Virus record (IMG/VR): IMGVR_UViG_3300017963_000188
Location: 248,001-312,000 of that record
DNA length: 64,000 nt
Direction: 5' to 3' (one strand)
The notes beneath the pieces were generated by a model, which saw only the letters and a program-made list of their open reading frames with translations, had not been told where the DNA came from and searched no databases. The stretch's first letter is position 1; each line of letters opens with the position of its first letter. Both the position numbers and the translations under genes were made by a program. Shown here piece by piece: positions 9,925 through 50,400 of the stretch.

Positions 9925-9925
9925 T

Positions 9926-16863: not shown

Positions 16864-16875
16864 TAGAGGTGATTC

Positions 16876-17082
16876 ATGAATGAACAGGAAGAGAACATTG
16901 CTGAAGAGGTAGAAGAACCAAAGAAGGAGCCTTTCAAGTGGAAGCATAACAATGACATTATGCAGAATATGGCTAGTAAGTTCATAGGTCCTTTGGGAAT
17001 GCTCAAAGATGCTTTGGTAGAGGAAAGAAACAAGCTAGTAAAGAATCGTAACGAATGCAGGAAGCGTAATTTAAATGGCTGA
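16876..17082 (+). CDS. Small hypothetical protein
   Basis: 68 aa, SD GAGGTG upstream, overlaps the next start. Confidence 0.6.
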   Translation: MNEQEENIAEEVEEPKKEPFKWKHNNDIMQNMASKFIGPLGMLKDALVEERNKLVKNRNECRKRNLNG

Positions 17083-18934: not shown

Positions 18935-18935
18935 T

Positions 18936-20833: not shown

Positions 20834-20835
20834 AT

Positions 20836-32878: not shown

Positions 32879-35455
32879 ATGGATAAGAATTTTGATGGTT
32901 CTGTTTCGGGTTATCTAGATCCTGAAGAAAGAGCCTGGGAAACAATAGTTTACCAAAGCTCAAAGCCAATCTTGGATGTGGAGCAAAACTTACTTCAAGA
33001 TGCAAATTTTGAAGCTGCTCTTCGTAGGGTATCAGTTCCCAGTGGTTGGTTAAAGGGTGATTTCCTTGGTGGGAATATTGATTTTGAATACAGTAGCTCT
33101 ACAGCTAATGAATTCAAGTTGGTCAATAAACCAGTAGCTTTGGTGAATGGTTGGAAAGTAGTTGTCGAGTATACTGGCACTGATACAGCAAAAGAAAATA
33201 TACTTTCATTGTCAGCACCTCCAGCTACAGGTTGGAGAACAGACTTCGTGTTTTTAGAGGTCTGGAGGGCTTTGTTGAGTGCTAGTCCAGACACAACCAA
33301 TAAATCTGCTGGTGGTCGTGTCTATAGACATGGTAATGTAGGTATTGATCCAGCTCATGACGCTACTTTGAACTTTACAGATGATATTTTGCAGACTCCT
33401 CCTGGAGCTGAAACTTCTAAGAGAGTTCAGATTCAATATCGAATCAGAGTTGTAGATGGGATCAATATTAGTAGTTTCCCAATGGGTATGAACGATCCAA
33501 ATGTTGAGGCTCAGGGCACACAAGGATCTCCTGTAGGCACCTATACTTTTACTAACATGGGAGCTACTGCTGGTGATTATGGTCTATGGAGAGCCGGTGC
33601 TGGTGATACAGCGTCTCAGACAGCTCTTGGGACTGTGGATGGGTATAGTTATGCTATCCCCATTGCTGCTGTGTTTAGACGGAATACAACTGCTTTCTCA
33701 CAGTCTACTAATCATAATGGTGGTGTCCTGATAAGTGCTGGTACAAGTGACCGTCCAGATGATTTGTTTTCTGATGAGATTTCAAATGGTGATGTCCTTG
33801 ATATGAGACAGGGTACATCTCTTGTGGGTTGGGACCTTGATGAAATCTTGGAAACAAGCTTTTCAGCTTTGCTTGATAATACTTTATCTCAGGTAGAACA
33901 GAACACTAATAGTGTTCCTGGTTACACCTATGGGATGGTAGGGACTACTGTTCTACATGCTGATGAGATTGGTCCTGCTGGTACAGGTGGTTTGGGAGGT
34001 ATGAATATAGGGGAGCAGGATGCTGTCAGAAGGCGTTTCTCTGATAGAGCTATAGTAGAGCATCCCATAGTCATAAAAACCCCTACAGGAGCAACCTGGG
34101 TGAGTGACGAGGTTGTTACAATCAATCTTGGTAACTTCAATCCATATCCATTTGATGAGGGTTCAGGGTTTGACCTTGCATCAATGAGCCCTGCAAATAC
34201 GGTCATTACCGATATTCGATCTGCCTATTTTGATCATCCAAATACAACTACTGGTAAGGTCAAGGCATTTTTCAGTGAGATAAAGGGTATTGGTTCAAAT
34301 ATTGTCACATTGACTCTTGCGGATGGGGTGTGGACAGGTAATAGTCCTGATCTATGGCTCGAAGTTGAAATATCCTACCCACCTGGGAATGGTTTGACTG
34401 CAACTCCATCCAATGATTTTGGAGATACTTGGAATTCTGGTGCAGGTGGACCATTTACTTTGGAAGATGACCCCGCTGGTAGTCGTCCCGCTGACTTCAA
34501 TGACTTTGTAAATCTTGAAGTGGTGAAAAATAACCGTGAAGTTCAGGTTTTGTATGAGACAACAGATAAGACACTAGATGTATATGCTAAGGATGTGAAC
34601 ACTATAGTCCTTCCAGATCGTGTTGGTTCTGTGACAAGTGTAACAGAAGATCCATTGGGCACACCTGTTGGTCATTCATTTACTTTTACAGCAAATGATC
34701 CAGATAGGGAGATTTCAACATCTGTTGATCCACTTTCAGATCCAGATGCTTTAGTCAGAGTGGTCTATAAAGCTCTTAGACCTATTCCAAATACAGTAGG
34801 GTACTATCAAACAGTTTTTTATCAATCCAGAGCATTACAGCCTGTGAAAGATAGTATGCTGCCGAATAGTTTATTGTATCGTACCTTGTATGTGAGCCCA
34901 TATATATACGCTTTGACTGGTGGGACGGGATCATTTGGAGCTACTTATCCATATGAAGTTCCTCATGTCCACATCCCTGTATATATCAATGGAGCAGCTC
35001 CATATGTATTCAATGGGGAACATGAATTAGACTCTCCTCTTGACACCTTTACTGATGACTTTGATGCTGCTTCGGGATTTTTAAGAGTTTCTCAGAATAT
35101 ACCTCTTGTTCCGATGGCTTCAGCAGAATTACAACGGACTGCTGTGACTGATGTTGATCCTGAACAACGGGCTTTTTACCCAGAAGTACCAACATCAGAA
35201 TATCGACCCGCAGCATTTGGTAAGAACCTTTCTTTCCCACAGCGGCATAAAGTGTTCTTTCCAATTATAGCAGAACTTTTAGATGACTATGATTTCGGTA
35301 ACAAAGGCACATTGGTAATGATTGTCTTTATCCGATGGGCTGAAAATGACAATGAGAACAATGTCAGATTCGTAGATACTCCTGCTGATGATACTAGTTG
35401 TGCTGCTGTTTACCGACTCAAGGGGAATCTGTTACTGAATAGACGGAGTGTCTAA
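32879..35455 (+). CDS. Tail fibre/baseplate appendage protein, family A paralog 1 (DUF4815/DUF6519-like N-terminus)
   Basis: 858 aa. IVYQSSKPILDVEQN, DFVFLEVWRA, ETSKRVQIQYRIRV and GLWRAG...DGYSYAIPIAAVFRRN are shared with ORF 55380-59384. Confidence 0.6.
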   Translation: MDKNFDGSVSGYLDPEERAWETIVYQSSKPILDVEQNLLQDANFEAALRRVSVPSGWLKGDFLGGNIDFEYSSSTANEFKLVNKPVALVNGWKVVVEYTGTDTAKENILSLSAPPATGWRTDFVFLEVWRALLSASPDTTNKSAGGRVYRHGNVGIDPAHDATLNFTDDILQTPPGAETSKRVQIQYRIRVVDGINISSFPMGMNDPNVEAQGTQGSPVGTYTFTNMGATAGDYGLWRAGAGDTASQTALGTVDGYSYAIPIAAVFRRNTTAFSQSTNHNGGVLISAGTSDRPDDLFSDEISNGDVLDMRQGTSLVGWDLDEILETSFSALLDNTLSQVEQNTNSVPGYTYGMVGTTVLHADEIGPAGTGGLGGMNIGEQDAVRRRFSDRAIVEHPIVIKTPTGATWVSDEVVTINLGNFNPYPFDEGSGFDLASMSPANTVITDIRSAYFDHPNTTTGKVKAFFSEIKGIGSNIVTLTLADGVWTGNSPDLWLEVEISYPPGNGLTATPSNDFGDTWNSGAGGPFTLEDDPAGSRPADFNDFVNLEVVKNNREVQVLYETTDKTLDVYAKDVNTIVLPDRVGSVTSVTEDPLGTPVGHSFTFTANDPDREISTSVDPLSDPDALVRVVYKALRPIPNTVGYYQTVFYQSRALQPVKDSMLPNSLLYRTLYVSPYIYALTGGTGSFGATYPYEVPHVHIPVYINGAAPYVFNGEHELDSPLDTFTDDFDAASGFLRVSQNIPLVPMASAELQRTAVTDVDPEQRAFYPEVPTSEYRPAAFGKNLSFPQRHKVFFPIIAELLDDYDFGNKGTLVMIVFIRWAENDNENNVRFVDTPADDTSCAAVYRLKGNLLLNRRSV

Positions 35456-38400
35456 TGCCGACTAAAGTAGACCCAGGCACATTAGCCATTGGGAATGGTA
35501 AAGCAGCACAGGATTCTGTGTCTGTATCTTCCCTTGACTTTGCTCATGTAGTGGATTTCCAGGCTGCTCTATCAGGGCATCTCAATGATCCAATAGGTGC
35601 TCATCCAGCCACAGCTATTTCAACTCAGGATACCTATGGTAAATTCGATTGGACCCATGTCGAAGGGTCTTTGAATGAATTATCAGATCTCATGCCAGAT
35701 CTGATCAATACTTTGGGACAAGAGCAAGAGGGAGTCCCAAATAGTGGTGTGCCTTATTGGGGTACATTGGAAGATACTTACGATAGAATTGGAACCACTC
35801 AATCAGGTGGTTTTACTTGTACTACAGCAAATCATGCTCATGCTTCATGGAGTGGTGGGAATCAGGGGGGTACTCCTGGTAATTGGTTAGTAGAGACTCA
35901 TTGTTTACTTCAAAGTTCTATCACTACCTTTGATCTTTCTGGTATTTTGTACCCTGCTGACAGAGGGTATTTAGTATTGCTATATGCAAAGAATGGTGTC
36001 TTTGATAATACTGTGAATACAATTGAAGTTGGGGAACTTGATCTAGAAGCTAATTTCAGTGAGTCTTATAGACGTGTTCCCAATTATCAACAACCTAATT
36101 ATGTGGGTGTAGATACACATGATTCTGGGCCTGATATTTTCACACTAACATATCGACTCCCAGCTCTTAAGGAGTACAGTGCAGGAACACCTTATGAGCC
36201 ATATGATTTCAATTATCTGCAATTTCAGTTGGCTTATTTCAGTGTATCTATTGATCTCACATTATCACCATTCAATATTGGGGTTGATGTAGATTTTGGT
36301 TCTTTGAAACTGTTTCATTTCAAGACCTACAGTAATGTTGCTACAGCAGACTATAGTGCTTCAAATCTGTATGGGTCTCATGGTAAGTATGATATCTATA
36401 GTGAAGTCGATCCTGGACTGCCTGTTATTGGGACTCCTGGGACTGATTATATAGTTGAACCTACTTTTCCAGTTGGTACTGAAACACCTCCTGGTGGTAG
36501 TTATAACTGCGATTTGGCATCTCCAAATGATTTCACAAGTGCTTCAGCAGTCTTTGCAGGAGATGCTACTGATAGAGGGAAGATACTTACAGTCACAGGA
36601 TCAGTGAATGGTAACAATGGGGACTACCAAATATTAGTCGAAGATACGACTACTCATGTCAAGGTATATCCTGATTTTCCGGGGTCTCTTCCAGAAACCA
36701 CATTGAATTTTAGTATTTCTGCTCCAAATATTTTCAGATTGTCTGGTATATATCACTATGGTTCTGATAATGGATTTTGGTTGAAGTCAAGTATTGCAGG
36801 AGCAGTTTCTGGACTATGGAATCTCTCATATCTTACTGGGGTAGAATCAGATAGTAAGGTTTCTTCTGGATATCTTAGTGATAAATCTCCTTTGAAATAT
36901 GACCTTACAGATTTTGGTGCTGGGACTAGAGAAATCCCATATCATTTGTTAGATAATAATGATGCTATCAATCCTACTGATGGGTGGGATTTGAGTAAGG
37001 GAAATGGTCCAGGGCAGAGTGATGATGCAGAATACATAGGGGTTCTCATCAGCGGATCATCAGGTGGTGGTGTGAGTGACGATGCAAAAGTAAAAAATAC
37101 AATACGCACACCTTTTGCTTTGACAGAACTCGATGCAATCACTCAAACTGGTAATAAAATTCTGACAAATGCTTATGAACAGATTATAACTGGTAGATCA
37201 CAGATCGAAGATTTCACTACAGAGTTATTCAGGTATCATTTTGATGTGGCTCAAGATGAAAACACAGATTTGTTTGAACATGAGAGATACCCTTTAGTTC
37301 CTTATACTAGAGCTACTCCCAATATTGGTAATGATGGGGTGGTTTCTTCTACCAACACACTTACTTCTGCTACTGCAAATTTCACCAGTGGTGATACTGG
37401 GCGCACAATATTGATTTCTAGTGTGAAACTTTATTGGTCTGATAGTACAGCAAACAAAATACAAAGGTCCAACATTGATGGTTCGAGTGTTGAGGATGTT
37501 GTCACTGGTATTGGAGATGCTGCTGGTTTAGCACTCGATATTAATGGTGGGAAAATATATTGGGCCAATGCAACGGATCAGAAAGTACAACGAGCTAATT
37601 TTGATGGTTCAAGCATTGAAGATTTGGTGACTGGTCTTGGCACTAAGGTGTTTGCTGTTGCTTTAGATTTAGCTGTTGGGAAAATGTACTGGGCAGATTC
37701 GGATGCTGATAAAATACAACGATCTAATTTAGATGGGTCTGATGTTGAAGATGTTGTTTTAACGGGGGTAGGTAATCTTCAAAGCCTCGCTTTAAATCAC
37801 AATCTCCAAAAAGTATACTGGTCTGATCAAGGGACTTCAAAAATACAACGAGCCAATTTTGATGGTTCTGATGTTGAAGATGTTATCACAGGTGCTTCAG
37901 GTCCTAATAATATTGCTTTTGATTATACTGAAGGGAAGATGTACTGGACTGAGACAGCAGGTAACTCTATACGGAAAGCGAATTTTGATGGTTCAAGTGC
38001 AGTAAATGTCCTTACAGGATTGTCATGGCCAAGAGGTATGGCAATAAATGTTGAAGAAAGGAAGATTTATTGGTTTGACGGGAGCACCAACAATTTAAGG
38101 CAAACAGATTTCGATGGTAGCTACCTTTTGACTTTGAATTCAGGGATTTCGAATATGCCTCATATAGCATATTATGATAATCCTGTGTACGATGGTAGTT
38201 ACAAAGCTACATATGTTAGTTCTACTCAAATTACAGTGGAACCTGATTGGCCTACTCATATAGAAACTTCTGTGTCTTGGTACTTCCCAACAGTCTGGGA
38301 TTCTGATCTTGCTTTAGGATCACATATCCAGAACGAGCTTCAAGTTTTGGATGGTAAACTTGTTTACCCACAGACTAATTTCACTGCTGGGTATTACCCT

Positions 38401-39597
38401 AGTAATGGTCAGCAAAATTACGCTACGTTGTTTGCTGCTGATGTTGCTAATACAATTCGATGGTATACTCGACTTATTGACACACAATCTCCAGCAAATA
38501 GTGGTAAAATTCGTATCAAAGGTATTTCTGATTCTGCTTTTGCTGCTGGTGTTTACACAGGGGATTTGGTAGCAGACCATTCAGGTGGGGCTGTGGTTTT
38601 GATGAAAGTTCCTGGTGTGACAGGGTGGCTTGATTTGGGTCGTTATGATGGAGATCCAAATTCTGATAAGACTCAAGATTACTATGGTTGTTTAACATTT
38701 GCTTTTTACACTCAGGATATACAAACAGGGGTAGGTACCACATATGGTATAGCTCTTGATACTGATTCTGAAAAGATATATTGGGCTGATAGTAGTAGTG
38801 GGGATATTAAACGATCTGATTTTGATGGTAGTAACATTGAAACCATTCATACAGGACTTGGATCTCTTCGAGGTATTGCCATTGATGCAAATGGTGGAAA
38901 ACTCTATTGGGTTGATTTCACTGGTTTCATCTATCGTTCAAATATAGATGGATCAAATATTGAGACAATAATCTCAGGGTTGTCTTTTCCCAGATGTCTT
39001 GCTCTAGATATAGATGCAGGTAAGTTGTATTATGGGGGTAATGGTGGGATAAAACGATCCAATCTGGATGGCTCTGATATTGAAGATATTATCATTATAG
39101 GGACTGTAGGTGGGTTGTCTCTAGATACAAATGCCGAGAAAGTGTATTGGTTTGATATTCTTGGCACAAAGAAAATCCTACGAGCCAATCTTGATGGTAG
39201 TTCGGTGGAGGTTCTTGTAGATTATGGGATTGACCCTACTGGTATTGCTGTTGATGCTGCTGGAGGGAAAATATATTGGGTTGATACTACAGGCACAGAT
39301 TATGTTAAACGTGCTAACCTAGATGGTTCTGATATTGAAGATGTTATAGGTCTAGGGAGTCAGAACCCTACTGCTATAGTTTTAGATGTTTCTGATAATA
39401 TTATGTATTGGGCAGAGGATTCCAGTAGTAAGATCCGAAGAGCCAACATGGATGGTTCAGGTATTTATAGTTATAACACTGAATTCTACACTCAAGATAA
39501 TGGTGATGGGGGATGCCCTATTGCTATTAGGATAGGTTTCATCAAAGATGGTACGGGTGAAAACCATGAGGTTGAATCCATTGAATGGTTACCATAA
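35455..39597 (+). CDS. Virion appendage protein, family B paralog 1, with two six-bladed LDLR class B (YWTD) beta-propellers
   Basis: 1380 aa. HLNDPIGAHPATAIS fibre-type motif. Twelve KxYWxD...IxRxNxDGS repeats (about 37423-38175 and 38718-39462). KVPGVTGWLDLG C-terminal scaffold. Confidence 0.8.
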   Translation: MPTKVDPGTLAIGNGKAAQDSVSVSSLDFAHVVDFQAALSGHLNDPIGAHPATAISTQDTYGKFDWTHVEGSLNELSDLMPDLINTLGQEQEGVPNSGVPYWGTLEDTYDRIGTTQSGGFTCTTANHAHASWSGGNQGGTPGNWLVETHCLLQSSITTFDLSGILYPADRGYLVLLYAKNGVFDNTVNTIEVGELDLEANFSESYRRVPNYQQPNYVGVDTHDSGPDIFTLTYRLPALKEYSAGTPYEPYDFNYLQFQLAYFSVSIDLTLSPFNIGVDVDFGSLKLFHFKTYSNVATADYSASNLYGSHGKYDIYSEVDPGLPVIGTPGTDYIVEPTFPVGTETPPGGSYNCDLASPNDFTSASAVFAGDATDRGKILTVTGSVNGNNGDYQILVEDTTTHVKVYPDFPGSLPETTLNFSISAPNIFRLSGIYHYGSDNGFWLKSSIAGAVSGLWNLSYLTGVESDSKVSSGYLSDKSPLKYDLTDFGAGTREIPYHLLDNNDAINPTDGWDLSKGNGPGQSDDAEYIGVLISGSSGGGVSDDAKVKNTIRTPFALTELDAITQTGNKILTNAYEQIITGRSQIEDFTTELFRYHFDVAQDENTDLFEHERYPLVPYTRATPNIGNDGVVSSTNTLTSATANFTSGDTGRTILISSVKLYWSDSTANKIQRSNIDGSSVEDVVTGIGDAAGLALDINGGKIYWANATDQKVQRANFDGSSIEDLVTGLGTKVFAVALDLAVGKMYWADSDADKIQRSNLDGSDVEDVVLTGVGNLQSLALNHNLQKVYWSDQGTSKIQRANFDGSDVEDVITGASGPNNIAFDYTEGKMYWTETAGNSIRKANFDGSSAVNVLTGLSWPRGMAINVEERKIYWFDGSTNNLRQTDFDGSYLLTLNSGISNMPHIAYYDNPVYDGSYKATYVSSTQITVEPDWPTHIETSVSWYFPTVWDSDLALGSHIQNELQVLDGKLVYPQTNFTAGYYPSNGQQNYATLFAADVANTIRWYTRLIDTQSPANSGKIRIKGISDSAFAAGVYTGDLVADHSGGAVVLMKVPGVTGWLDLGRYDGDPNSDKTQDYYGCLTFAFYTQDIQTGVGTTYGIALDTDSEKIYWADSSSGDIKRSDFDGSNIETIHTGLGSLRGIAIDANGGKLYWVDFTGFIYRSNIDGSNIETIISGLSFPRCLALDIDAGKLYYGGNGGIKRSNLDGSDIEDIIIIGTVGGLSLDTNAEKVYWFDILGTKKILRANLDGSSVEVLVDYGIDPTGIAVDAAGGKIYWVDTTGTDYVKRANLDGSDIEDVIGLGSQNPTAIVLDVSDNIMYWAEDSSSKIRRANMDGSGIYSYNTEFYTQDNGDGGCPIAIRIGFIKDGTGENHEVESIEWLP

Positions 39598-39609
39598 TGA
39601 GGTATTTCG

Positions 39610-42600
39610 ATGCCAACTAAAGTAGATCCAGGTACTCTTGCCATAGGTAGTGGTAAGGCTGCTCAAGATAGTATTTCAGTATCTTCTCTTGATTTTGCTC
39701 ATTTGATTGATTTTCAAGCAGCTTTGTCAGCTCACGTCAATGACCCTGATGGGGCTCATCCAGCTTCTGCTATTTCGGTGCAGGATGTTTACGCAAAATA
39801 TGATGGTGTGAATGCTGAAATCGTGTTTGATGAAATTTCTGATCTTGTTCCAGATTACCCTAATGCTATTGGTGAAAGTCGATCAGTTCCAAATTCGGGA
39901 GTGCCTGATTGGGGTGTTTTGGATACATACTCTAAGACAGGTGGTTTCACTTGTGATACAGCAAATCATGGTCATACATCGTGGGGTGGTGGGAATCAAG
40001 GAGGCACCCCAGGGGATTGGATAGCAGAGACTCATTGTTTGATTCCTGATACAGTCACAGGCTGTGTAATTACAGGTACACTGTACCCTGCTGATAGAGG
40101 ATACCTTGTGCTATTGTATGCTACAAAGGGTGTGTTTGATAATAGTGGGGATACAATAGAAGTTGGAAAGCTGAATCTAGCTTCTAATTTTGATGAGCTT
40201 CGTAGACGAAACCCTGCTGTGGGATACCAACAACTTGATTACACAGCTTCTGAAAATCATTGGGACCCTGGCACAGATATATTTTCACTAACGTATCGTC
40301 TTCCAATGCTAAAGGAATATGATGCTGGAGTACCTTATACTACATATGATTTCAATTATCTTCAGTTCCAATTAGCTCGATACACAGCCACATTGGATTT
40401 GACGGCTACTCCATTTGATATTGGTACTGATGTAGATTTTGGATCTCTTAAATTGTTCCATTTCAAGTCATATACAAATGTGGCTGGAGCTAATTACAGT
40501 GCTTCAAATCTGTATGGGTCACATGGGAAATTGGATATTTATTCTGACACTTCACCAGCAGCTCCAACTTTAAATGAAGCTGGTGGTGAGGTATTAATCA
40601 ATGCTGCATATCCTTTGGGTACAGAAACAACGTCAGTAGTAGCAAATGCTGACCTCACAACTCCGAACAATCTGGCTGCTGGTACAGCAATCTTTGCTGG
40701 AGATTCTACAGACCGTGGCAAGATACTTACCATTACAGGTTCTAGTCAGGGGAACAATGGTACTTACCAAGTTTTGAATGAGGTAGACGCCTCGAATGTC
40801 AAGGTATACCCTAATTTCCCTGGCACATTGCCTGATACAGTGACACCACAAGTGCAGATAGAAGGTGCTAATGTAGTACGTCTTTCAGGAATAGCACATT
40901 ATGGTCCTGATAATGGTTTTTATGTAGACCAGACTTTTATCACCACTCCAGATTTTTGGAATAATTCATACCTAACCAGTGATGTGGCTGATCCAAAAGT
41001 GTCTTCGGAGTATTTAAGTGATAAGTCACCTCTGAGTTATGACTTTAGTGATTTCGGAGTTGTTGTAAAAGACATACCTTACCATTTGGATCTTTCTTCT
41101 GTTAGTTTGAGTAAAGGAGATGGACCAGCAATAGATACTTCTGCTAGTCATCGAGCTACATTCATAAGTCAAGAATCTTTAGTAGTAAGAAAGGGTGGTA
41201 GTTCCTATTTGTCTAGAGTATCACATATAGTACGTTCTCCTTTCACCACAATGCAAGATTACAGCTCAAATCCAGTTGGTATCCTTTTGGTAGACGTTTA
41301 TGGGCAAGAAATATCTAGTAAAATGAAAGAAGAATTTTACACAGAGCAGTATAGATATGATCTTGGTACAGATCTCTTAGAGTTCATCAAGTATCCAATA
41401 ATTCCTTATGATCGTAGTGCTCCAAATTTTGGGGATGATGGTGTTGTTTCAGGGTCAAATACCTTTACTTCAGCTACAGCTAGTTTTACTTCAGCAGATA
41501 CTGGTAGAATAATAAATATTGCTAAAAGGCCAAAATTATATTGGACTGACCGTCAGGATGACCAAATTCAAAGATCTAATCTTGATGGAGCATTTGTCGA
41601 GACCGTGTATTCATGGGGACAGAATCCAAATGGTATAGCTTTAGATACTGTTAATGGTAAAATTTACTGGGCTGATTTTAATTACCAAGAAGTAAAGAGA
41701 ATGAATTTTGATGGTAGTGGTTTTGAGACAGTATGGTCGGGACAGCAAGTATATAAAATAGCACTTGATGTAGATGCTGGTAAAATTTATTACTCAGACA
41801 GAGGAGACCATTGGATAAAACGAGCAAATATGTCAGATGGTTCTAGTAAAGAAAGTCTTATTAATTATGATGATGTCGATTGTGTGTTTCTTGATATCGA
41901 TGCAGGTAAAATATACTATACTACAGGAAGCCCAGGATTAAATACCATCTCTAGAGCTAATATGTCTGATGGTTCTAGTATTGAAGTTTTGTATACTGTA
42001 ACCAGTCCTGAATGGATACCTGATTTTGCTTTTGACTTAATACATGGATATATTTATTTTACAGTTATTGGTCCTTCAGGTAGAATTATGCGGTGTGATT
42101 TGGATGGTTCAAATGATGTCACAATAACACCATCAGTAATGGCTTACAATATTGAAATTGATGTTGATGGTGGTAAGTTATATTGGAGTGATGTGACTTC
42201 CAATGTCATTAAATGGAGTGACTTGGATGGTTCTAATATTGAAAGTATTATTTCAGTGACATCAGGGTCCGAATCTGTGAGGGATATGGCTCTGATGTTG
42301 GAATCTTCTTTTGAGAGTTATACTGCTACTTATGTCAATGGTACTGAAATAAGTGTGAGTCCCGATTGGCCTTCAGTAGATGGTGTTATGCGGGAATGGA
42401 GATTTCCAGTGCAATTTGATTCAGATGCAGATCTTTCAACATTCACACAAAAAGAACTTCAAGTTGCATCTGGGCAATTAGTAGTGCCAGAAAATGATTA
42501 CACCGCAGGTTGGGCTTTACCAAGTGCTGGTCAGTTTGATTATAGTGGTTTAGCAGGTGGGGACCCTGCTGATACAATTCGATGGTATACAAGACTTTTT

Positions 42601-43773
42601 GACACTGGAGGACCTACTAATGTAGGTAGATTCCGAATTAAAGGTATACATCAAAAAGATTTTGGAGTGACTGGGCCTTTCACTGGTGATTTACCTACAG
42701 ATCATGAAGGTGACACTATATCTGGTGAGGGTGGATCAGTAGGGGGTGGTGTAGTTGTTTTGGTGAAAATACCTGGTGTGACAGGTTGGTTGGATCTAGG
42801 TCGTAGTAATGGTGATCCTAACATTGATAAGACAAAAGATTACTATGGATGTCTGGTTCAGTCTAACCAAATTGAGAATCTGGTAGATGGTCTTACAGAT
42901 TCAAATGCCATAGCTCTTGATATAAATGCTAGTAAGATGTATTGGACTGACACAGTAACTTCAAAAATACAACGATCTGACCTTGATGGATCGAATGTTG
43001 AAGATATTTACACAGCATCAGATGCTTGGGGTATTGCTCTGGATACTAATGCTGATAAAATGTACTTCACTAGTCCAGGCGCAAATAAGATTAGAAAAGC
43101 AGACCTAGATGGTAGTAATGTAGAAGATTTAGTAGATACTGGGTCAGGATTGCCTACAAGTATTGCTTTGGATATCAATGCTGGTAAAATGTATTGGATC
43201 AGTTTTGGACCTCCAAATCATATCTATCGAGCAAATTTAGATGGCTCAATGGTAGAAACTCTTGTATCAAATATTGGTGCTAATCCTTATGGTATAGCAT
43301 TAGATGTGGATGCTGGATATATGTATTGGTCTGATACAGCAGAGAGTTATATTAGACGAGCTGATTTGGATGGTTCTTTTGTAGATATCGTGGTGGAAGA
43401 TGCTTTGAGTCCAAATGGAATAGCTCTTGATCTAGAAGAAGGGAAGATTTATTGGCAAGGTCTGAGTCAAATCAATAGATGTGACCTTGATGGTTCTAAT
43501 AGGGAAGATTCTATAACACCCAGAGGATTGACTAAAGGGAAAGGTTTGGCTTTGGATACGGATTCTCGTAAGATATACTGGACCAATTATAATCACCATA
43601 AGATACAAAAGACAAGTATGGATGGTATGAGCATATATACTTACACTACAGATTATTACACTCAAGATAACGGTTTGGGAGAGTATCCCATTGCTATTAG
43701 GATAGGTTTAATAAAAGATGGTTATGGTTACTGGAATGACGTGGTAACTATCGAATGGCTACCGTATACATAA
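39610..43773 (+). CDS. Virion appendage protein, family B paralog 2, with two YWTD beta-propellers
   Basis: 1387 aa. Collinear full-length paralog of the previous gene (MPTKVDPGTLAIG start, EWLP end). Twelve YWTD-type repeats (about 41530-42300 and 42871-43626). Confidence 0.8.
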   Translation: MPTKVDPGTLAIGSGKAAQDSISVSSLDFAHLIDFQAALSAHVNDPDGAHPASAISVQDVYAKYDGVNAEIVFDEISDLVPDYPNAIGESRSVPNSGVPDWGVLDTYSKTGGFTCDTANHGHTSWGGGNQGGTPGDWIAETHCLIPDTVTGCVITGTLYPADRGYLVLLYATKGVFDNSGDTIEVGKLNLASNFDELRRRNPAVGYQQLDYTASENHWDPGTDIFSLTYRLPMLKEYDAGVPYTTYDFNYLQFQLARYTATLDLTATPFDIGTDVDFGSLKLFHFKSYTNVAGANYSASNLYGSHGKLDIYSDTSPAAPTLNEAGGEVLINAAYPLGTETTSVVANADLTTPNNLAAGTAIFAGDSTDRGKILTITGSSQGNNGTYQVLNEVDASNVKVYPNFPGTLPDTVTPQVQIEGANVVRLSGIAHYGPDNGFYVDQTFITTPDFWNNSYLTSDVADPKVSSEYLSDKSPLSYDFSDFGVVVKDIPYHLDLSSVSLSKGDGPAIDTSASHRATFISQESLVVRKGGSSYLSRVSHIVRSPFTTMQDYSSNPVGILLVDVYGQEISSKMKEEFYTEQYRYDLGTDLLEFIKYPIIPYDRSAPNFGDDGVVSGSNTFTSATASFTSADTGRIINIAKRPKLYWTDRQDDQIQRSNLDGAFVETVYSWGQNPNGIALDTVNGKIYWADFNYQEVKRMNFDGSGFETVWSGQQVYKIALDVDAGKIYYSDRGDHWIKRANMSDGSSKESLINYDDVDCVFLDIDAGKIYYTTGSPGLNTISRANMSDGSSIEVLYTVTSPEWIPDFAFDLIHGYIYFTVIGPSGRIMRCDLDGSNDVTITPSVMAYNIEIDVDGGKLYWSDVTSNVIKWSDLDGSNIESIISVTSGSESVRDMALMLESSFESYTATYVNGTEISVSPDWPSVDGVMREWRFPVQFDSDADLSTFTQKELQVASGQLVVPENDYTAGWALPSAGQFDYSGLAGGDPADTIRWYTRLFDTGGPTNVGRFRIKGIHQKDFGVTGPFTGDLPTDHEGDTISGEGGSVGGGVVVLVKIPGVTGWLDLGRSNGDPNIDKTKDYYGCLVQSNQIENLVDGLTDSNAIALDINASKMYWTDTVTSKIQRSDLDGSNVEDIYTASDAWGIALDTNADKMYFTSPGANKIRKADLDGSNVEDLVDTGSGLPTSIALDINAGKMYWISFGPPNHIYRANLDGSMVETLVSNIGANPYGIALDVDAGYMYWSDTAESYIRRADLDGSFVDIVVEDALSPNGIALDLEEGKIYWQGLSQINRCDLDGSNREDSITPRGLTKGKGLALDTDSRKIYWTNYNHHKIQKTSMDGMSIYTYTTDYYTQDNGLGEYPIAIRIGLIKDGYGYWNDVVTIEWLPYT

Positions 43774-43785
43774 GGATGTTTAGGC

Positions 43786-46700
43786 ATGGCAACATTCAAC
43801 GACCATTTCAAAGATCTCTTAAATCTTGTTGCCAAGAGAGTTTTGGGTCGGGAGCACACTTCTGATATTCCTATTGACTTGGAAGGAGCCTATCGTCCCT
43901 ACAATCAAATAACTCCATTTGATAAGATTGAAGATACAGGTCTTAGTGAATTTAAGTATACTTCTGGTATCAGGAAGTCAAACGCTACTCAGCCAGAAGT
44001 TAATCTTTTCAGTTTTTCTGATAATATTTCTGATAATGCTCAAGGACGTATTGCTACTATTTACGGTATTAAAGAAGTAAGCTATTCAGATACTGATGGT
44101 AGTGACGTTGGGTATGTAGCTGATAACTACAGATTCATTCACAGGACGTTTGATTTCCCTGACCAGGGGGTCAGTGCTGGGGATGTTATGTTTGTGCCTC
44201 TGACAGGTAGATTCTACGTCTCAGATGCAGTTATTACAGGAGATCCACCTAATACTGGACTTCAATTTCCTGTAGATACTTTTTCAGAGCCTACATTCAC
44301 ATTTGGTTCAGATATTGATGTTCTGATTCTTCAGAGAAATGCTGTTCAACTTTTCACTGTATCTGGACCCAATGTAGAAGTAGGTCGAGAACAAACCTTT
44401 TTTATGGTTACTCCTGATGTGGTTCAAAACCCAAGTCCTTATCTTGCTGACTTAAATTTGCTATCTCCAAAACGTCTACGTCCCTTGATGCCTCATAGGA
44501 AGAGTACCAAGATTGATTCAATCTTCACAAAAGGAGTGTTGGGTCTCAAATCAGATTGGGATTTTATGCTGGTTCTTTATCCAGATGATGGTGCTGGAAA
44601 TCCAGATTACACAAAACCAATCATAGGACCGAGACCTATAATCGATAGCTCTATCTCTGATGAACAGGAAATGATTATTGACCATATGAATGGTTCTGTT
44701 CATTTTACAGTGCCTCCACGTCCAGGAGATGAAATCAATCCAAATGCTGTGACCGGAGCACCCCTGAAACTGTGGGCTATCTTTGCTACCATAACAATGG
44801 GCACTAGTGTATCTCAGACAAATTCAAATAGTCTTGTTCGAGGTGTCAGTGATTTCAACCCAGTATTGGTTGATGATAAAACAAGCACCCCTTCATATTT
44901 CAGATATGACCAGAATAGAAAGATTTGGTCGTTATTTTCAGGAGAAAAATATCTAGAAACAGATCCAGCAAATCAACCAGCTCAAGGGTTTGAGGTTGGT
45001 GAGCTAGGAGTAGAGAAAACCAACAGAGCAGGTTTCAGATTAAATCCAGAGAATGAAACTTGGGAAGTGTGTTCTATCCCTTCTGATTCTGATTTCATAC
45101 CGTTACGACTCACTTCAGGAGAAGTTGGGGGTACTCATCCTGGTATCAGTGTGGACGCTCCAGGATATACAGGTGGTTTCTTTTATAACAGTGGTGAAGA
45201 TAGATGGGGTTTGGATAAAGACCTATACATGGTTACTGCTGTTGAGGAATTAGGTTCTGATTCTTTACCTAATAGTTCGAATGTGAAAGTGGCTGTGTCT
45301 GGTAATTTTGCATATATTATCAGGAATGTGTCTGGTGATGGGTTCCTTTATGTATATGATATATCAGATCCTAATGCTATTGTTATGAGAGATTCTGAAG
45401 TTGTTGCAGGTCGTGAATTTCTAGACATAGATATATCTGGAACCAATGTTTTTGTCCTTATAACAAATGAAATTCAAGTCTACAATGTTTCAAATCCAGA
45501 TAGTATCTCATTGACAGATGGGTACCCTGCTGGTTCAGATGTGTATTTCCAAAGATTAAAAGTAATTGGTGATTATGTTTATGTTGTTGTACTATCATAC
45601 TTTACAGAATTATTCAATTGGGGATCTAGTCTATGGGTTCTTGATTTTAATGTGACAACGGCAGATGAACTCACTTATAGAGATGATGCTAATGTTCTTG
45701 GTCCACATGATCCACCTGGTCCTGGTTATGTGTCAGTGACAACAACTGATGTTTCTATAATAGCTACTATGATGTATAAAGAAGTTTTGTATACAATTGA
45801 TGTCACAGATCCAGATTCTGTATCTGTTCTTGATAGCGTTGTTGTTACAGATGGAACAGAAGTTGATGTTGAAAGAGACATAGTTGCAGTGTTATGTCCT
45901 GATGAATCTATAGATACTTTGAGGTTGTTTGATATTTCCAATCCGTCTTCCATACAAGTTAGAGATACTACAACATCTGGTTTGGATTCACCTGTTGATG
46001 TGATTGTTTCTCGTGGATATGTTTGGGTAGCTAATAGTGGTGATATGACACTTCTCAAATTTAGTGCTGTGAATCCTCTTAATATTGTGTTAGATAATTC
46101 ATATATCCAAACAGGTAATGGATTACTAGATCTAGATCTTAATAATAGTAAATTAGCTGTGTTAACAAGTAGTCCAACTACTGATATTCTGAAAATTTAT
46201 AATGAAATAAATACACAAGTACAGTTCCATCAAATAATATCTTCTTCAATTGATACTGATTATCTTGATTCTGAAACGGCAGTCATTGAAGATTTGACTG
46301 CAACAATAGTCAGGACAAATACTATTGATGGTGGCAGTTCTTTATTGTCTGTAGATGCTAATACTGAAATAACAGGTTCACTAATAACTAATGGTGTGAC
46401 CAATTCTGGTATTGTGCGGAGTTCTGATTCTAATATACCAATCCAAGGAAGTGCTACTGGGTCATATTCATCTAGTCAGATAGTAGGTTCTCAGCTCGCT
46501 CCTTGGGGTGTTGATATCGATTACACTACTGGTAAAGTCTATTGGGCCAGTTATGGTAGATCTTCTGGGCAAGATATCATTCAAAGAGCTAATCTAGATG
46601 GGACGAATGTTGAAACAATAATTGGTGGCTTGCAGCAACCATATGCTTTAGAGTTAGATGTTCCTGGAGGAAAAGTCTATTGGTCTGATATGTTTACCAA

Positions 46701-47415
46701 TGGTATTCATAGAGCTGATCTTGATGGGTCAAATACTGAACAAATAATAACAGGACAAGATGAACCTCGTGATATAGCTCTTGATTTAGTTGGGGGAAAG
46801 GTGTATTGGACAGAATCTGCTGGGAATGTAGTGAGAAGAGCTAATCTTAATGGTTCTTCTGTTGAAACTCTTGTCTCAGGTCTTTCGCAACCACAAGGGA
46901 TAGCGGTAGATCCAGCAAATGGTAAGATGTATTATTCTGATGAAACTCTTGCAAAGATAGTGCAGGCCAATTTGGATGGTTCTTCACCTGTAGATATTTT
47001 AACAACTATAGATGCTCGTAATCTTGTTGTTAGGCATAATAAATTATTTATTTCGGAGTATGTTTCTGATCGTATTAGAATGTCTAATTTAGATGGTTCT
47101 AATCTTGTATATATTAAATCAGGTGTGAATCTGACTCCATGTGGTATTGGTGTGAGAGACCATTTATTGGTTTGGACATCAACATATAATGATAATGTAA
47201 GTAAAATACCATTAGTTGTGTCAGGTATTTTAGGTGAGGCAGAAGATGGTTATGGTGGATACTTTTTTGGGACAAGTACCAGAGCACCTATCCATGTTGA
47301 AGGTATGAGTGCTTTACCATCAAGTGCAATGCAAGGTGATATTGCAGTTAGAGATAGTGATAACACCGTACATATATACCTGAATAGTGCTTGGAGACAG
47401 TTCACTGTCACATAG
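43786..47415 (+). CDS. Tail fibre-like protein, family C paralog 1, with LVIVD-like and YWTD propellers
   Basis: 1209 aa. N-terminal ~480 aa shared with the next two ORFs. LVIVD-like repeats (VAVSGNFAYI, LYVYDISDP, LRLFDISNP) at about 45230-46205. Six YWTD-type repeats at about 46480-47215. Confidence 0.75.
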   Translation: MATFNDHFKDLLNLVAKRVLGREHTSDIPIDLEGAYRPYNQITPFDKIEDTGLSEFKYTSGIRKSNATQPEVNLFSFSDNISDNAQGRIATIYGIKEVSYSDTDGSDVGYVADNYRFIHRTFDFPDQGVSAGDVMFVPLTGRFYVSDAVITGDPPNTGLQFPVDTFSEPTFTFGSDIDVLILQRNAVQLFTVSGPNVEVGREQTFFMVTPDVVQNPSPYLADLNLLSPKRLRPLMPHRKSTKIDSIFTKGVLGLKSDWDFMLVLYPDDGAGNPDYTKPIIGPRPIIDSSISDEQEMIIDHMNGSVHFTVPPRPGDEINPNAVTGAPLKLWAIFATITMGTSVSQTNSNSLVRGVSDFNPVLVDDKTSTPSYFRYDQNRKIWSLFSGEKYLETDPANQPAQGFEVGELGVEKTNRAGFRLNPENETWEVCSIPSDSDFIPLRLTSGEVGGTHPGISVDAPGYTGGFFYNSGEDRWGLDKDLYMVTAVEELGSDSLPNSSNVKVAVSGNFAYIIRNVSGDGFLYVYDISDPNAIVMRDSEVVAGREFLDIDISGTNVFVLITNEIQVYNVSNPDSISLTDGYPAGSDVYFQRLKVIGDYVYVVVLSYFTELFNWGSSLWVLDFNVTTADELTYRDDANVLGPHDPPGPGYVSVTTTDVSIIATMMYKEVLYTIDVTDPDSVSVLDSVVVTDGTEVDVERDIVAVLCPDESIDTLRLFDISNPSSIQVRDTTTSGLDSPVDVIVSRGYVWVANSGDMTLLKFSAVNPLNIVLDNSYIQTGNGLLDLDLNNSKLAVLTSSPTTDILKIYNEINTQVQFHQIISSSIDTDYLDSETAVIEDLTATIVRTNTIDGGSSLLSVDANTEITGSLITNGVTNSGIVRSSDSNIPIQGSATGSYSSSQIVGSQLAPWGVDIDYTTGKVYWASYGRSSGQDIIQRANLDGTNVETIIGGLQQPYALELDVPGGKVYWSDMFTNGIHRADLDGSNTEQIITGQDEPRDIALDLVGGKVYWTESAGNVVRRANLNGSSVETLVSGLSQPQGIAVDPANGKMYYSDETLAKIVQANLDGSSPVDILTTIDARNLVVRHNKLFISEYVSDRIRMSNLDGSNLVYIKSGVNLTPCGIGVRDHLLVWTSTYNDNVSKIPLVVSGILGEAEDGYGGYFFGTSTRAPIHVEGMSALPSSAMQGDIAVRDSDNTVHIYLNSAWRQFTVT

Positions 47416-47425
47416 GAATAGATTT

Positions 47426-50400
47426 ATGGTAGATTTCAATGAACATCTTAAAGATCTGTTAGACCTAACCTCAAAGAAGGTTTTGGGTCGTGAGCATACT
47501 TCAGGAGATCTTTCTCCTGAACTTGAACAGATCCGTCGCCCATATAATCAAATCACACCATATGATTATGTTAAAAATACAGGTCTTGAGAACCTTAGCT
47601 ACACAAGAGGTATTAGGAAACCATCTGGTCAAAATCCACAAAAGAATTTGTTTAACTTTTTGAAAAACTCCGGTTCAGATGCCATTGGTCGAATTGCTAC
47701 CATAGTTGGGATAGAAGAACTAGGTTCTTCAGATGTGGATGGAGCTAGCAAAGCTCAATTCTTGAGTGGTCCTGATAGATTGGTGCATGACACTGCAAGT
47801 TATTTCTCAAACCAAGGAGTGACGGCAGGAGACTATTGTTACTTCCCATGGAATAGGAAGTTTTATCGTATCTTCAGTGTGGCTGCCGATACAATTCAGT
47901 TTGATGGTACTCCTCTTAGTGATAGTGGGTTTGTTGCTTCTACATATTATGATGCCCTGATCCTTACATTACAGCCTGAAAAATTATATACGGTTCCTGG
48001 CATCCTTGGACAAGAACAGACATACTTCATGATGAGACCTGATAGTCCTCCAATCATTAATTCAGGAGATTATGCTTCAGATCCTCACGAGTTGGAAGAA
48101 TATCGGTTACGACCATTGATGCCATATCGAAAGCCTGTTCGAATTGATGCTATCTTCAATGAGGCTTTAGGAAGTGAAGATTTAAAAGAGAATTGGGATT
48201 TCCAGATTGTACTATTTCCCGATGATGGATCAGGTTCTCCTGATCTTACAAAGCCTATTGTAGAGGGTCCTGTTGTTATAGACAGTGAGAAATCACTAGA
48301 TGAACAGGCTATGATTGTGGATCATGCTAATGGTTCTGTTCGGTTTACAGTACCCCCTCAACCTGGAGATGCTATAAATCCAACTTCTATCACTGGTCAA
48401 TCTTTGAAGCTTTGGGCTGTATATGCTGTTATCACACCAGATCCAACTCATTTTTCAAATGGTGATGTGTCTGGATATAGTAATATAGCAAGAGGTCTGA
48501 CAGATTATCCTGCAATTGATGTTGAGTCAGGTCTATATGATTACCCTTCATATTTTCAATATGATCGTAATCGTAAAATCTGGTCACTATTTTCTGGATC
48601 TAAATATCTAGACCCAAATTCTGAGGACCAACCAGTCCAAGGTTTTGAGATTGGTGAAATGGGTAGGGGAAAAGATAATAGTCCTGGATTCAAGTTAGAC
48701 CATGTGAATGGTAGGTGGGAAGTTAGATCAAAAGCATTAGATGCTTCTGAGGACATTACTCTATTTCTAAGTTCTGGTGAAGATGGTGTATCACAACTTG
48801 GGATTGGTGCTCTTCAAAATGGATCAAAGTTAAGTGACTTTGGATATGATGAGTCTGATGATAGATGGTCTTTAACAAGTAATTTGAGATTGAAAAAATC
48901 TCTTGATGCATTCACTCTACAGACATTGGGATCAGATAATTTGGATACATTTGCTGATCCTGATATGATTCGTATTTATAACAGTAATTGCATTTTAGCA
49001 TTGAGAAACAAAGGTACTTATACAGCAGAAATTGGTTTGTTTCATGCCGCAGACCTTGATACAAATTCAGTGACTCTTAAGGATACCATTACAGTTCCGA
49101 ATGCAGTGAGTTTTGTATTTGCGAATTGGAATGGTTATAGACTGTATGTTGCTTTAAGCAATGGTGATATTGCTAGATATAATATTCTTCCAACTATATA
49201 TGATGCTGGAGCTACGTTTAGTTATGTTACCACATATACAACAATACCTTATGGATATACAGTTGTTGAGGTGAAAGATATTCAGTATGAAGGGACACCT
49301 AGACCTCCAAGTGATCCAGATCCTTTTGGAGAATCATTTCATAGAGTATTGGTTTCTGTTATTATAGATGATGCAGGGGATCATAAACTTACTTTTGGTG
49401 GTGTTGAGCTTCAAGTTGGTGGTGGTGATTACATACCAACCACTGTTTTCCGTACCTTTGGTGCTGTCCTAACTTCAGATACTGATCCAGTTGGACAATA
49501 TATATTTGTAGATGGGCTTTCAAATGATTATTCACATGAAGACAATGACCATATCTATGCTATAACAAATAATGGTGTTGATTGGTATACATCCACAGAT
49601 TTCCCTGATTCTACAGATTTTATTGTTGGGTATCGTGATTTTGAATCTATATCAAATGTAATAGCTCAATGCTATTATGACCGAGTTTTGTATGTAGTTT
49701 CATCTACAGCATTACGTGTCGTTGATGTTCCTGATGATGAGACATACACTTTTATAACCAGGGGATCAACTACAGATGGTATTGAGACTCCAATAGATAT
49801 TACTATTGATGGGCCAAATTCTATTGTTTACATTTTGAATTCAGATTCAACAGTGTCTATCTATGATGTGTCAGATCCTGATACACCTACATTCCTTAGG
49901 ACTCGTCCAGTTAATTTCTCCTCAACTCCACGTCAGATAGAGTTCTTTGATTACACTGGTAATGCTTTAGCATTAGAGCAAGGTGATGATAATGGTGGTG
50001 TGGTTTCTTTGATTGGTGATGAGACGTATCTATCAACTATCGATAATTTACGTTCCAGCTCTATAAATACAGATGTTATAAGTACAGACTTATTAGAGTC
50101 AAATGACCCTACTGATATTTTGAAATTGAATGTAGCAAAAATTATGTCAGGGGAGTTTGTAACTATCGGAGATGGTACCAATACATTTGGGCATTACAAT
50201 GGTACTGATGAAACTCCATTTTCAGATGCTGTGACAAAACTCCCAAATGGTGGGACTATATTTGTTTTTCCTGGGACATATACTTTTGGTAGTAATGTCA
50301 ATTTACCCAATGGTGTAAATTTGATTGGATCTGATCCAAACAATTGTGTTATAGAAATTGGTTATAATGGTTCTTGTTTCACAGGGCTAGGTGACCAATC

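What the first reader, a model, noticed from the sequence alone, without database searches (positions are those of the whole stretch)
38580..39597. Second propeller inserted inside the conserved C-terminal KVPGVTGWLDLG domain
Seen: both family B paralogs have VPGVTGWLDLGR.xGDPNxDKTxDYYGCL, then a six-blade propeller, then IYxYxTxxYTQDNGxGxxPIAIRIGxIKDG...IEWLP. The scaffold is nearly identical on both sides of the insert, while the blade sequences diverge strongly between paralogs (equivalent site about 42750-43773). Inference: a second independent insertion site, with conserved scaffold and variable cargo, as expected of receptor-binding cassettes under diversifying selection.
Basis: partly seen in the sequence, partly recalled or inferred. 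Interest (0 to 1): 0.65.

Follow-up and report, generated by a model that had tools for sequence, protein, structure and literature searches.

The report
YWTD propeller inserted in phage tail-protein tip
Two neighbouring tail-protein genes of an uncultivated 358-kb phage each carry a six-bladed LDL-receptor-type (YWTD) propeller spliced into a hairpin of their C-terminal beta-sandwich domain. That domain is uninterrupted in more than a hundred relatives, so this is a real nested domain insertion, probably an added host-binding module.

Summary
ORF A (35455-39597) and ORF B (39610-43773) both read ...VPGVTGWLDLGR..GDPN.DKT.DYYGCL, then six YWTD blades, then IY.Y.T..YTQDNG...IEWLP.

A profile of the N-flank found 122 relatives among 1.84 billion representative proteins. 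In almost all of them the C-flank follows within about 25 residues. Only A, B and one metagenomic relative (P0004) carry the propeller, at identical junctions. AlphaFold models (pLDDT 91 and 82) place the insert at the turn of a beta-hairpin of a generic beta-sandwich. Foldseek matches the insert to LRP6, LRP4 and megalin propellers (E about 1e-19).

"Nearly identical scaffold" is overstated. The 29-residue motif is 83% identical, the N-flank 56% and the C-flank 64%, against 39% for the propeller. All remaining propeller identity is repeat consensus.

Diversifying selection is not shown. Synonymous sites are saturated, dN/dS is 0.5 or less in every segment, and the genome has no reverse transcriptase. 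Cassette swapping is neither shown nor excluded.

The gene lies in a contractile-tail baseplate and fibre module of a jumbo phage. A displayed adhesin is the best functional reading, and it is inferred. YWTD propellers gave no match in 50,697 deposited phage records or in PHROGs.

Verdict: a new variant of a known kind.

The parts
35455..39597 (+). ORF A (P0001, 1380 aa): tail/baseplate-peripheral protein of an unannotated family. Without its two propellers it is 869 aa.
   Evidence: lies downstream of the hub, gp25-like and Baseplate_J genes
35455..37410 (+). A N-terminal part (residues 1-652). The first 40 residues are 90% identical to B, which suggests a shared attachment end (inferred).
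37411..38178 (+). A propeller 1: six YWTD blades inserted in a small domain of about 65 aa. It starts at blade strand B and ends with strand A.
38254..38694 (+). A N-flank of the C-terminal beta-sandwich ('GWLDLG') domain, residues 934-1080. The conserved motif is at 38608-38694.
38695..39459 (+). A propeller 2: six YWTD blades (residues 1081-1335) inserted at the hairpin turn. It starts at blade strand D and ends with strand C.
39460..39594 (+). A C-flank of the same beta-sandwich (residues 1336-1380, three strands), followed by the stop codon.
39610..43773 (+). ORF B (P0002, 1387 aa): tandem paralogue of A, 48% identical overall.
41518..42297 (+). B propeller 1
42373..42855 (+). B N-flank of the GWLDLG domain (residues 922-1082); motif at 42769-42855.
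42856..43629 (+). B propeller 2 (residues 1083-1340)
43630..43770 (+). B C-flank of the GWLDLG domain (residues 1341-1387)
43786..47415 (+). ORF C (P0003, 1209 aa): an unrelated neighbouring protein that also carries a YWTD propeller near its C-terminus (about 46441-47235).

Best explanation
The interval encodes the C-terminal beta-sandwich domain of a tail or baseplate-peripheral protein of a 358-kb contractile-tailed jumbo phage. A six-bladed YWTD (LDL-receptor class B) beta-propeller of about 255 residues has been spliced into the turn of one beta-hairpin of that domain. The sandwich strand ending in ...YYGCL.. leads out into the propeller, and the chain returns into the partner strand IY.Y.T. 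The insertion happened once, in the common ancestor of A, B and the metagenomic relative P0004. A separate event placed propeller 1 in an upstream small domain. The gene was later duplicated in tandem. Since then the sandwich and the blade framework have been kept, while every loop position of the propeller has diverged to chance level. Both inserts are tethered through the face that carries the A-B and C-D loops. This leaves the B-C/D-A ('top') face, the usual ligand-binding face of such propellers, pointing away from the scaffold. Most likely the propeller is an added binding module displayed at the distal end of the fibre, so the phage carries several different adhesin heads. Shown: the insertion, its position, the fold class, its single origin in this clade, and the faster divergence of the cargo. 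Inferred: the distal location, the outward-facing top surface, the binding function and the ligand.
For: A profile of the N-flank found 122 relatives at E<=1e-3 and 45 at E<=1e-10. The tail after the 'YYGC' position is 44-66 aa in the closest ~50 relatives, but 289-305 aa in A, B and P0004. The distance from GC to NGxGxP is 24-25 residues when uninterrupted and 258-273 in A, B and P0004. In a 44-row alignment both flanks align to one contiguous domain. The AlphaFold2 model of A 934-1380 has pLDDT 91.4 and pTM 0.83. The model of the uninterrupted P0129 domain has pLDDT 82.5. Their secondary-structure elements match one to one, and the hairpin E149-158/E161-167 is the one that is opened. Foldseek matches the insert to LRP6, LRP4, megalin and LDLR propellers at E 7e-20 to 1e-14. 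Pfam PF00058 scores 141 bits. With propellers removed, A, B and P0004 are 869, 869 and 866 aa, against 879 aa for propeller-less P0129. A, B and P0004 form a 98/97-supported clade whose sister is P0129. The junctions are the same in all three. Gene order in L003 matches the window, with a single propeller-less gene at this position. Baseplate hub, gp25-like and Baseplate_J genes lie upstream. Identity is 83% in the motif and 56-64% in the flanks, against 39% in the propeller. Same-index blades of A2 and B2 are 0.39 identical and different-index blades 0.40, with identity near zero in the B-C and D-A loops.
Against: No homology to any characterised receptor-binding protein was found. PHROGs and Pfam match nothing outside the propeller. 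The sandwich matches only generic CBM, Eph-LBD, MAM and phage-baseplate folds at Z<=6.9. I could not inspect model coordinates, so the packing of the flanks and the outward orientation rest on matched secondary structure, homology and blade topology. No ligand, host or expression data exist. Weaker Pfam hits to enzymatic six-bladed families (SGL at 54 bits, Vgb_lyase) leave an enzymatic role open.
Confidence: 0.75

Rival explanations
1. Cassette replacement. The propellers at this site in A, B and P0004 are not descendants of one insert, but were exchanged or re-acquired, for example from bacterial secreted proteins or from other propeller genes of the phage, at a fixed permissive site.
For: The tree of the seven propellers is a star with no supported branch. 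Propellers at the same site (39-46% identical) are no closer than those at different sites (34-44%). Each phage propeller is closer to propellers of large bacterial proteins (44-59%) than to any other phage propeller. The same hairpin holds a different insert of about 84 aa in P0040, P0045 and P0047.
Against: The junction and blade register are identical in A, B and P0004. GC and GC3 of the inserts equal those of the flanks. No long or near-identical DNA repeats link the copies. Closeness to bacterial proteins is expected if those are near the repeat consensus. Saturation of unconstrained sites (pS 0.53-0.73) alone explains the loss of signal.
Confidence: 0.15
2. The propeller is an enzyme, such as a lactonase, lyase or depolymerase-like six-bladed propeller that degrades a host surface polymer, rather than a binding module.
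For: Pfam SGL (PF08450) scores 54 bits, above its cut-off of 26, and Vgb_lyase scores 36-50 bits. Catalytic six-bladed propellers are known in phage tailspikes, for example the K1F endosialidase (PMC12632334).
Against: The Ldl_recept_b score is far higher (141 bits). All top structural matches are non-enzymatic YWTD receptors. Loop positions are not conserved between paralogues, which does not fit a conserved active site. A separate beta-helix protein (47387-52294; Beta_helix and NosD hits) is the more usual kind of depolymerase candidate nearby.
Confidence: 0.1
3. Ordinary linear multidomain protein. The segments before and after the propeller are independent domains, and nothing was inserted.
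For: All three proteins of the closest clade carry the propeller.
Against: More than 100 relatives have the two segments contiguous, with a 24-25 residue spacing. The secondary-structure elements match a single predicted sandwich.
Confidence: 0.02

Closest known systems
YWTD / LDL-receptor class B six-bladed beta-propellers (LDLR, LRP4, LRP6, megalin, nidogen; Pfam PF00058)
   Same: Same repeat motif, same number of blades and same predicted fold. Foldseek E 7e-20 to 1e-14 with 19-26% identity. Pfam score is far above the cut-off.
   Different: Here it is viral, has no flanking EGF modules, and sits as an insert inside a hairpin of another domain. Its nearest sequence relatives are propellers of large secreted bacterial proteins from Gemmatimonadota and Phycisphaerales MAGs, not animal receptors.
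Beta-propellers in phage host-recognition proteins: phi11 Gp45 (five blades), PRD1 P2 (distorted five blades), phiKZ gp131C (seven blades), K1F endosialidase (catalytic propeller)
   Same: A propeller carried by a tail or baseplate-peripheral protein and proposed, or for K1F shown, to contact the host surface (PMC4901313; PMC12632334).
   Different: Those propellers belong to other classes and are placed in series along the chain. This one is YWTD class and nested in a beta-sandwich hairpin. It occurs twice per chain and six times in the genome. No tblastn match was found in 50,697 deposited phage records and no PHROG match.
Carbohydrate-binding-module-like / jelly-roll beta-sandwiches at the ends of phage fibres and baseplate proteins (for example the phi812 baseplate protein 9euf_0)
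   Same: The host domain is a two-sheet beta-sandwich at the C-terminus of a tail-module protein. Best VIA-align Z is 6.9, rmsd 2.9 A, 111 residues aligned.
   Different: The match does not stand out from dozens of unrelated sandwiches (Eph LBD, MAM, CBM35 at Z 5-7). There is no sequence relation to any solved chain, and homology is not established.

Membership tests
YWTD (LDL-receptor class B) beta-propeller, PF00058 | Repeat profile match above the curated cut-off | tested here: met
   141.3 bits (A) and 104 bits (B) against a cut-off of 21
YWTD (LDL-receptor class B) beta-propeller, PF00058 | Six repeats of about 42 residues with a YW[TS]D-type strand and a ...DGS turn | tested here: met
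   Six units per propeller, spaced 39-44 aa apart
YWTD (LDL-receptor class B) beta-propeller, PF00058 | Six-bladed propeller fold superposable on LDLR/LRP propellers | tested here: met
   AF2 pLDDT 91.4; Foldseek top hits LRP6, LRP4, megalin and LDLR, E down to 7e-20. This is a predicted model, not a solved one.
YWTD (LDL-receptor class B) beta-propeller, PF00058 | Followed by an EGF module, as in the animal receptors (typical context, not needed for the fold) | tested here: not met
   The chain returns directly into the sandwich strand IY.Y.T; there is no Cys-rich module
Nested domain insertion | The parent domain occurs uninterrupted in homologues | tested here: met
   122 relatives; the tail after YYGC is 44-66 aa in the closest ~50; GC to NGxGxP spacing is 24-25 aa
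Nested domain insertion | Both flanks are homologous to the two parts of the parent domain | tested here: met
   44-row alignment A2
Nested domain insertion | The flanks fold together as one domain | tested here: inconclusive
   Secondary-structure elements of A's flanks match those of the uninterrupted model one to one, with pLDDT above 90 and pTM 0.83. Coordinates could not be inspected and no structure is solved.
Phage receptor-binding protein / tail fibre | Gene lies in the tail/baseplate module | tested here: met
   Hub-like, gp25-like and Baseplate_J genes at 7855-24264, and a beta-helix protein downstream. The same gene order is seen in L003 and L002.
Phage receptor-binding protein / tail fibre | Sequence or profile homology to a characterised RBP or fibre family | tested here: not met
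   No PHROG and no Pfam match outside the propeller; no INPHARED match to the scaffold
Phage receptor-binding protein / tail fibre | Binds a host surface receptor | not testable with these tools
   Uncultivated phage with an unknown host
DGR (diversity-generating retroelement) target | Reverse transcriptase, with template and variable repeats, in the genome | tested here: not met
   No PF00078 match in the complete 358-kb record; no near-identical repeat pairs in 35455-47415
Carbohydrate-binding-module-like beta-sandwich (host domain) | Structural match that stands clear of background | tested here: inconclusive
   Foldseek found none at E<=1e-3; VIA Z<=6.9 with many tied unrelated sandwiches; atlas TM<=0.46 by query

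The most novel reading that the evidence does not exclude
The hairpin of the GWLDLG sandwich is a natural display site that has accepted unrelated domains in different phage lineages: a YWTD propeller here, and a domain of about 84 aa in P0040, P0045 and P0047. This jumbo phage would then have built an array of six different YWTD propellers, taken originally from bacterial secreted proteins. It would use them as a loop-randomisable, antibody-like adhesin scaffold that sets host range.
Probability: 0.3. Interest if true: 0.7.

Novelty: new variant of a known kind. Interest (0 to 1): 0.5.

Why it matters
Host recognition of huge uncultivated phages is almost unknown. This locus gives a clean, comparatively dated example of how a tail protein gains a new head. 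A complete propeller, whose two ends lie next to each other, is dropped into a surface hairpin of the terminal domain. It is then kept while its loops drift freely.

The work defines an unannotated tail-protein family with at least 120 representative members, all labelled hypothetical. It also identifies a permissive insertion site that could be used to graft binding modules. Finally, it shows that the LDL-receptor-type propeller, best known from animal receptors, is used by phages. The six propellers in one genome are obvious candidates for expression and binding studies aimed at finding the host and receptor.

Tried and rejected
**dN/dS between A and B.** Synonymous differences are saturated (pS 0.53-0.73). 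The ratios (0.16-0.47) only show that no segment has dN above dS. They cannot separate positive selection from relaxed constraint.

**Propeller phylogeny and blade-by-blade comparison.** The tree is a star with no positional signal, so in-place divergence and cassette swapping cannot be told apart.

**Naming the host domain.** All of these gave nothing specific:
- PDB sequence search, single sequence and profile
- ESM Atlas by features
- Foldseek against PDB
- VIA-align wide search
- atlas shape search
- Pfam and PHROGs on six to seven relatives

The result is only a generic beta-sandwich.

**Is the ~84-aa alternative insert the same as the small 'G.il.isG..GN.G.Y' domain?** BLASTP gave E 0.52. 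hhalign gave E 0.011 with probability 4%. Not established.

**Composition test for recent acquisition.** GC and GC3 of the inserts equal those of the flanks.

**DGR search.** No reverse transcriptase.

**Population variation.** The IMG/VR copy differs by only two SNPs, at 39917 and 44888. Neither lies in propeller 2.

The analysis was redone from stored files.

**Not used.** Complex prediction, because no binding partner is claimed.

Full report
**Context.** The window is bases 248001-312000 of a single 358,038-bp virus record, rated complete by CheckV. All large ORFs lie on the + strand. Upstream of the finding are a baseplate-hub/lysozyme-like protein (7855-9924), a sheath-initiator (gp25-like) protein (19760-20833) and a Baseplate_J/gp6-like wedge protein (20836-24264). 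Downstream is a 1635-aa protein with right-handed beta-helix repeats. The nearest deposited phages for the wedge protein are an uncultured 485-kb phage (LR745208.1, 34% identity), Tunturiibacter phage Tunturi_5 and Bacillus phage G. The locus is therefore the tail-fibre/baseplate-periphery module of a jumbo myovirus-like phage.

**The observation.**
- ORF A (35455-39597, P0001, 1380 aa) and ORF B (39610-43773, P0002, 1387 aa) are tandem paralogues, 48% identical overall.
- Each contains two six-bladed YWTD propellers. Pfam Ldl_recept_b scores 141 and 104 bits against a cut-off of 21.
- In A the motif VPGVTGWLDLGR...DYYGCL is residues 1052-1080, the second propeller 1081-1335, and the closing segment GIYSYNTEFYTQDNG...IEWLP 1336-1380. 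B is collinear.
- A/B identity is 24/29 in the motif, 83/147 in the whole N-flank, 29/45 in the C-flank and 98/250 in the propeller.

**Is it an insertion?**
- A word search with the N-flank found only A, B and one other protein, P0004 (1109 aa, JGI metagenome). P0004 lacks propeller 1 but has propeller 2 at the same place.
- Because the claim depends on whether uninterrupted relatives exist, I ran the exhaustive profile search with an alignment of the three N-flanks (A1). It returned 122 proteins at E<=1e-3 and 45 at E<=1e-10.
- Rescoring locally, the sequence left after the profile end (…YYGC) is 44-66 residues in the closest ~50 relatives. It is 76-125 in more distant ones, and 289-305 only in A, B and P0004.
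- The spacing between the conserved GC and the conserved NGxGxP is 24-25 residues in uninterrupted proteins and 258-273 in A, B and P0004.
- In the 44-row alignment both flanks of A align to one contiguous domain. P0129, for example, reads ...VPGISGWLDLGR...DYYGCLITQEVISSNQIIFTYATDFYTQNNG...IEWIAY.
- P0042 (839 aa) and P0129 (879 aa) are full-length homologues with neither propeller. With the propellers removed, A, B and P0004 are 869, 869 and 866 aa.

**Structure.**
- AlphaFold2 on A 934-1380 with alignment A2 gave pLDDT 91.4 and pTM 0.83.
- The uninterrupted P0129 673-879 gave pLDDT 82.5 and pTM 0.79.
- Their secondary-structure elements correspond one to one. The hairpin E149-158/E161-167 of P0129 corresponds in A to strand 145-151 (P0001 1078-1084) and strand 403-408 (P0001 1336-1341), with the whole propeller between them.
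- Foldseek matches the A model to LRP6, LRP4, megalin and LDLR propellers (E 7e-20 to 1e-14).
- The host domain alone matches only generic beta-sandwiches: phi812 baseplate protein, Eph ligand-binding domain, MAM, CBM35 and similar at Z<=6.9. Foldseek found none at E<=1e-3, and the atlas TM by query was <=0.46. I call it a beta-sandwich and nothing more specific.
- I could not read model coordinates. That the flanks pack together rests on homology to a contiguous domain, matched elements and high confidence.

**Two independent sites.**
- Propeller 1 starts directly with a blade's strand B (K.YW.D) and ends with strand A.
- Propeller 2 starts with strand D and ends with strand C (…DGS).
- The registers differ, so these are separate events.
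- In a four-stranded antiparallel blade the A-B and C-D loops lie on one face, and the B-C and D-A loops on the other. This is established propeller geometry. Both junctions therefore replace loops of the A-B/C-D face. The B-C/D-A face, the usual ligand-binding "top" face, is left free. This last step is inference.
- Propeller 1 interrupts a small domain of about 65 aa that is intact in P0004 (residues 618-690) and recurs upstream in all family members.

**History.**
- A, B and P0004 form a clade (98/97 support) with propeller-less P0129 as sister. The order among the three is unresolved.
- The junctions of propeller 2 are the same in all three, so one insertion on the stem of this clade is the simplest account.
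- Whether propeller 1 was gained in the A/B ancestor or lost in P0004 cannot be decided.
- The syntenic locus L003 has one propeller-less gene where the window has A, B and C. L002 has one gene, P0004.

**Divergence of the cargo.**
- All seven propellers compared are 34-46% identical pairwise. They are A1, A2, B1, B2, ORF C, a sixth in the genome at 151958-154165, and that of P0004. Their tree is a star.
- Blades of the same index in A2 and B2 are 0.39 identical, blades of different index 0.40, and blades within one propeller 0.40-0.42. Identity at B-C and D-A loop positions is essentially zero. What the paralogues share is only the repeat framework.
- pS is 0.53-0.73 everywhere, so dS is saturated. 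dN/dS is 0.47 for propeller 2, 0.32 for propeller 1 and 0.16 for the motif and C-flank.
- The cargo has thus evolved faster than the scaffold. Positive selection is not demonstrated, and relaxed constraint on loops would be enough.
- The genome has no reverse transcriptase. There are no near-identical DNA repeats among the copies; the best A/B DNA stretch is 79% over 108 nt, exactly at the motif. GC and GC3 of the inserts equal those of the flanks.

**Origin and rarity.**
- Each phage propeller is 44-59% identical to propellers of large multidomain bacterial proteins. These come from Gemmatimonadota and Phycisphaerales MAGs and carry dockerin, FlgD-Ig, CARDB and T9SS-sorting domains. That is closer than to any other phage propeller. 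None of those proteins has the scaffold or the family's N-terminus. This fits a bacterial source with near-consensus repeats, but does not prove repeated acquisition.
- tblastn of propeller 2 against 50,697 deposited phage records gave no match at E<=1e-5. PHROGs has no family matching P0001 or P0003.
- A degenerate-pattern scan of IMG/VR found 15 other viral contigs with YWTD-like propellers (26-41% identity) in other large proteins. None has this scaffold.
- Full-text searches found no paper linking YWTD propellers to phage tail proteins.
- Known propellers in phage host-recognition proteins are of other classes: phi11 Gp45, PRD1 P2 and phiKZ gp131C (PMC4901313), and the K1F endosialidase (PMC12632334).

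**A permissive hairpin.** P0040, P0045 and P0047 carry a different insert of about 84 aa at the same hairpin. Its resemblance to the small domain that hosts propeller 1 is weak: BLASTP E 0.52, and hhalign E 0.011 with probability 4%. It is not established.

**Mechanism proposed.** The N-terminus is 90% identical between A and B over the first 40 residues. This fits a common docking site on the baseplate, with the variable modules lying distally. I propose that the propeller is a binding head displayed from the terminal sandwich, giving the virion several distinct adhesins. An enzymatic role (SGL and Vgb_lyase cross-hits) is a minor rival. Cassette exchange at a fixed site remains possible, at about 15%.

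**Verdict.** The insertion is real and well supported. The selective interpretation is unproven. The case is a new variant of the known theme of modular phage receptor-binding proteins, sitting in an unannotated family of huge-phage tail proteins.

Noticed in passing
window 37411-38178 and 41518-42297; P0004 residues 618-690: Propeller 1 of A and B is itself nested in a small domain of about 65 aa (G.il.isG..GN.G.Y.i ... P.fPG). That domain is intact in P0004 and occurs again upstream at A residues ~353-425. Weak tblastn hits to the same motif lie at window 26920-27135 and 15955-16089.
   Followed up: partly
proteins P0040, P0045, P0047 (metagenomic relatives), residues ~680-790: A different insert of about 84 aa occupies exactly the same hairpin of the GWLDLG domain, so the site has been used at least twice. 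What the insert is remains unresolved.
   Followed up: partly
genome 151958-154165 (+), outside the window (about 96 kb upstream): A sixth YWTD propeller of this genome sits at the N-terminus of a 735-codon stop-to-stop frame. It is followed by two repeats of about 125 aa and a Pro/Ala/Thr-rich tail.
   Followed up: no
window 43786-47415 (ORF C), residues ~480-860: Upstream of its YWTD propeller, ORF C has a run of repeats with a '..vyDiSdP..i...d' motif. From memory these look like LVIVD-type propeller repeats. Pfam reported no such family, so this is unverified.
   Followed up: no
L002 4592-7921 (P0004), residues ~845-965: Blades 1-3 of the P0004 propeller are about 75% identical to one another, against about 40% among blades of A2 or B2. 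This suggests recent blade duplication or homogenisation within that gene.
   Followed up: no
window 35455-35574 and 39610-39729: The first 40 residues of A and B are 90% identical, and the same MPT..DP... start is kept in P0004 and P0042. This is likely a shared baseplate-docking end.
   Followed up: no
window 47387-52294: The next gene encodes a 1635-aa protein with right-handed beta-helix and NosD-like repeats. It is a typical tailspike or depolymerase candidate, conserved in the syntenic locus L003 (1687 aa).
   Followed up: no
window 39917 and 44888: These are the only two differences between the window and the IMG/VR contig IMGVR_UViG_3300017971_000194 over about 17 kb (T>A and C>T). The two records are the same phage.
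   Followed up: yes
proteins P0134-P0251 (bacterial): The nearest sequence relatives of the phage propellers are large secreted multi-propeller proteins of Gemmatimonadota and Phycisphaerales MAGs. This is a possible clue to the donor or to the host phylum.
   Followed up: partly
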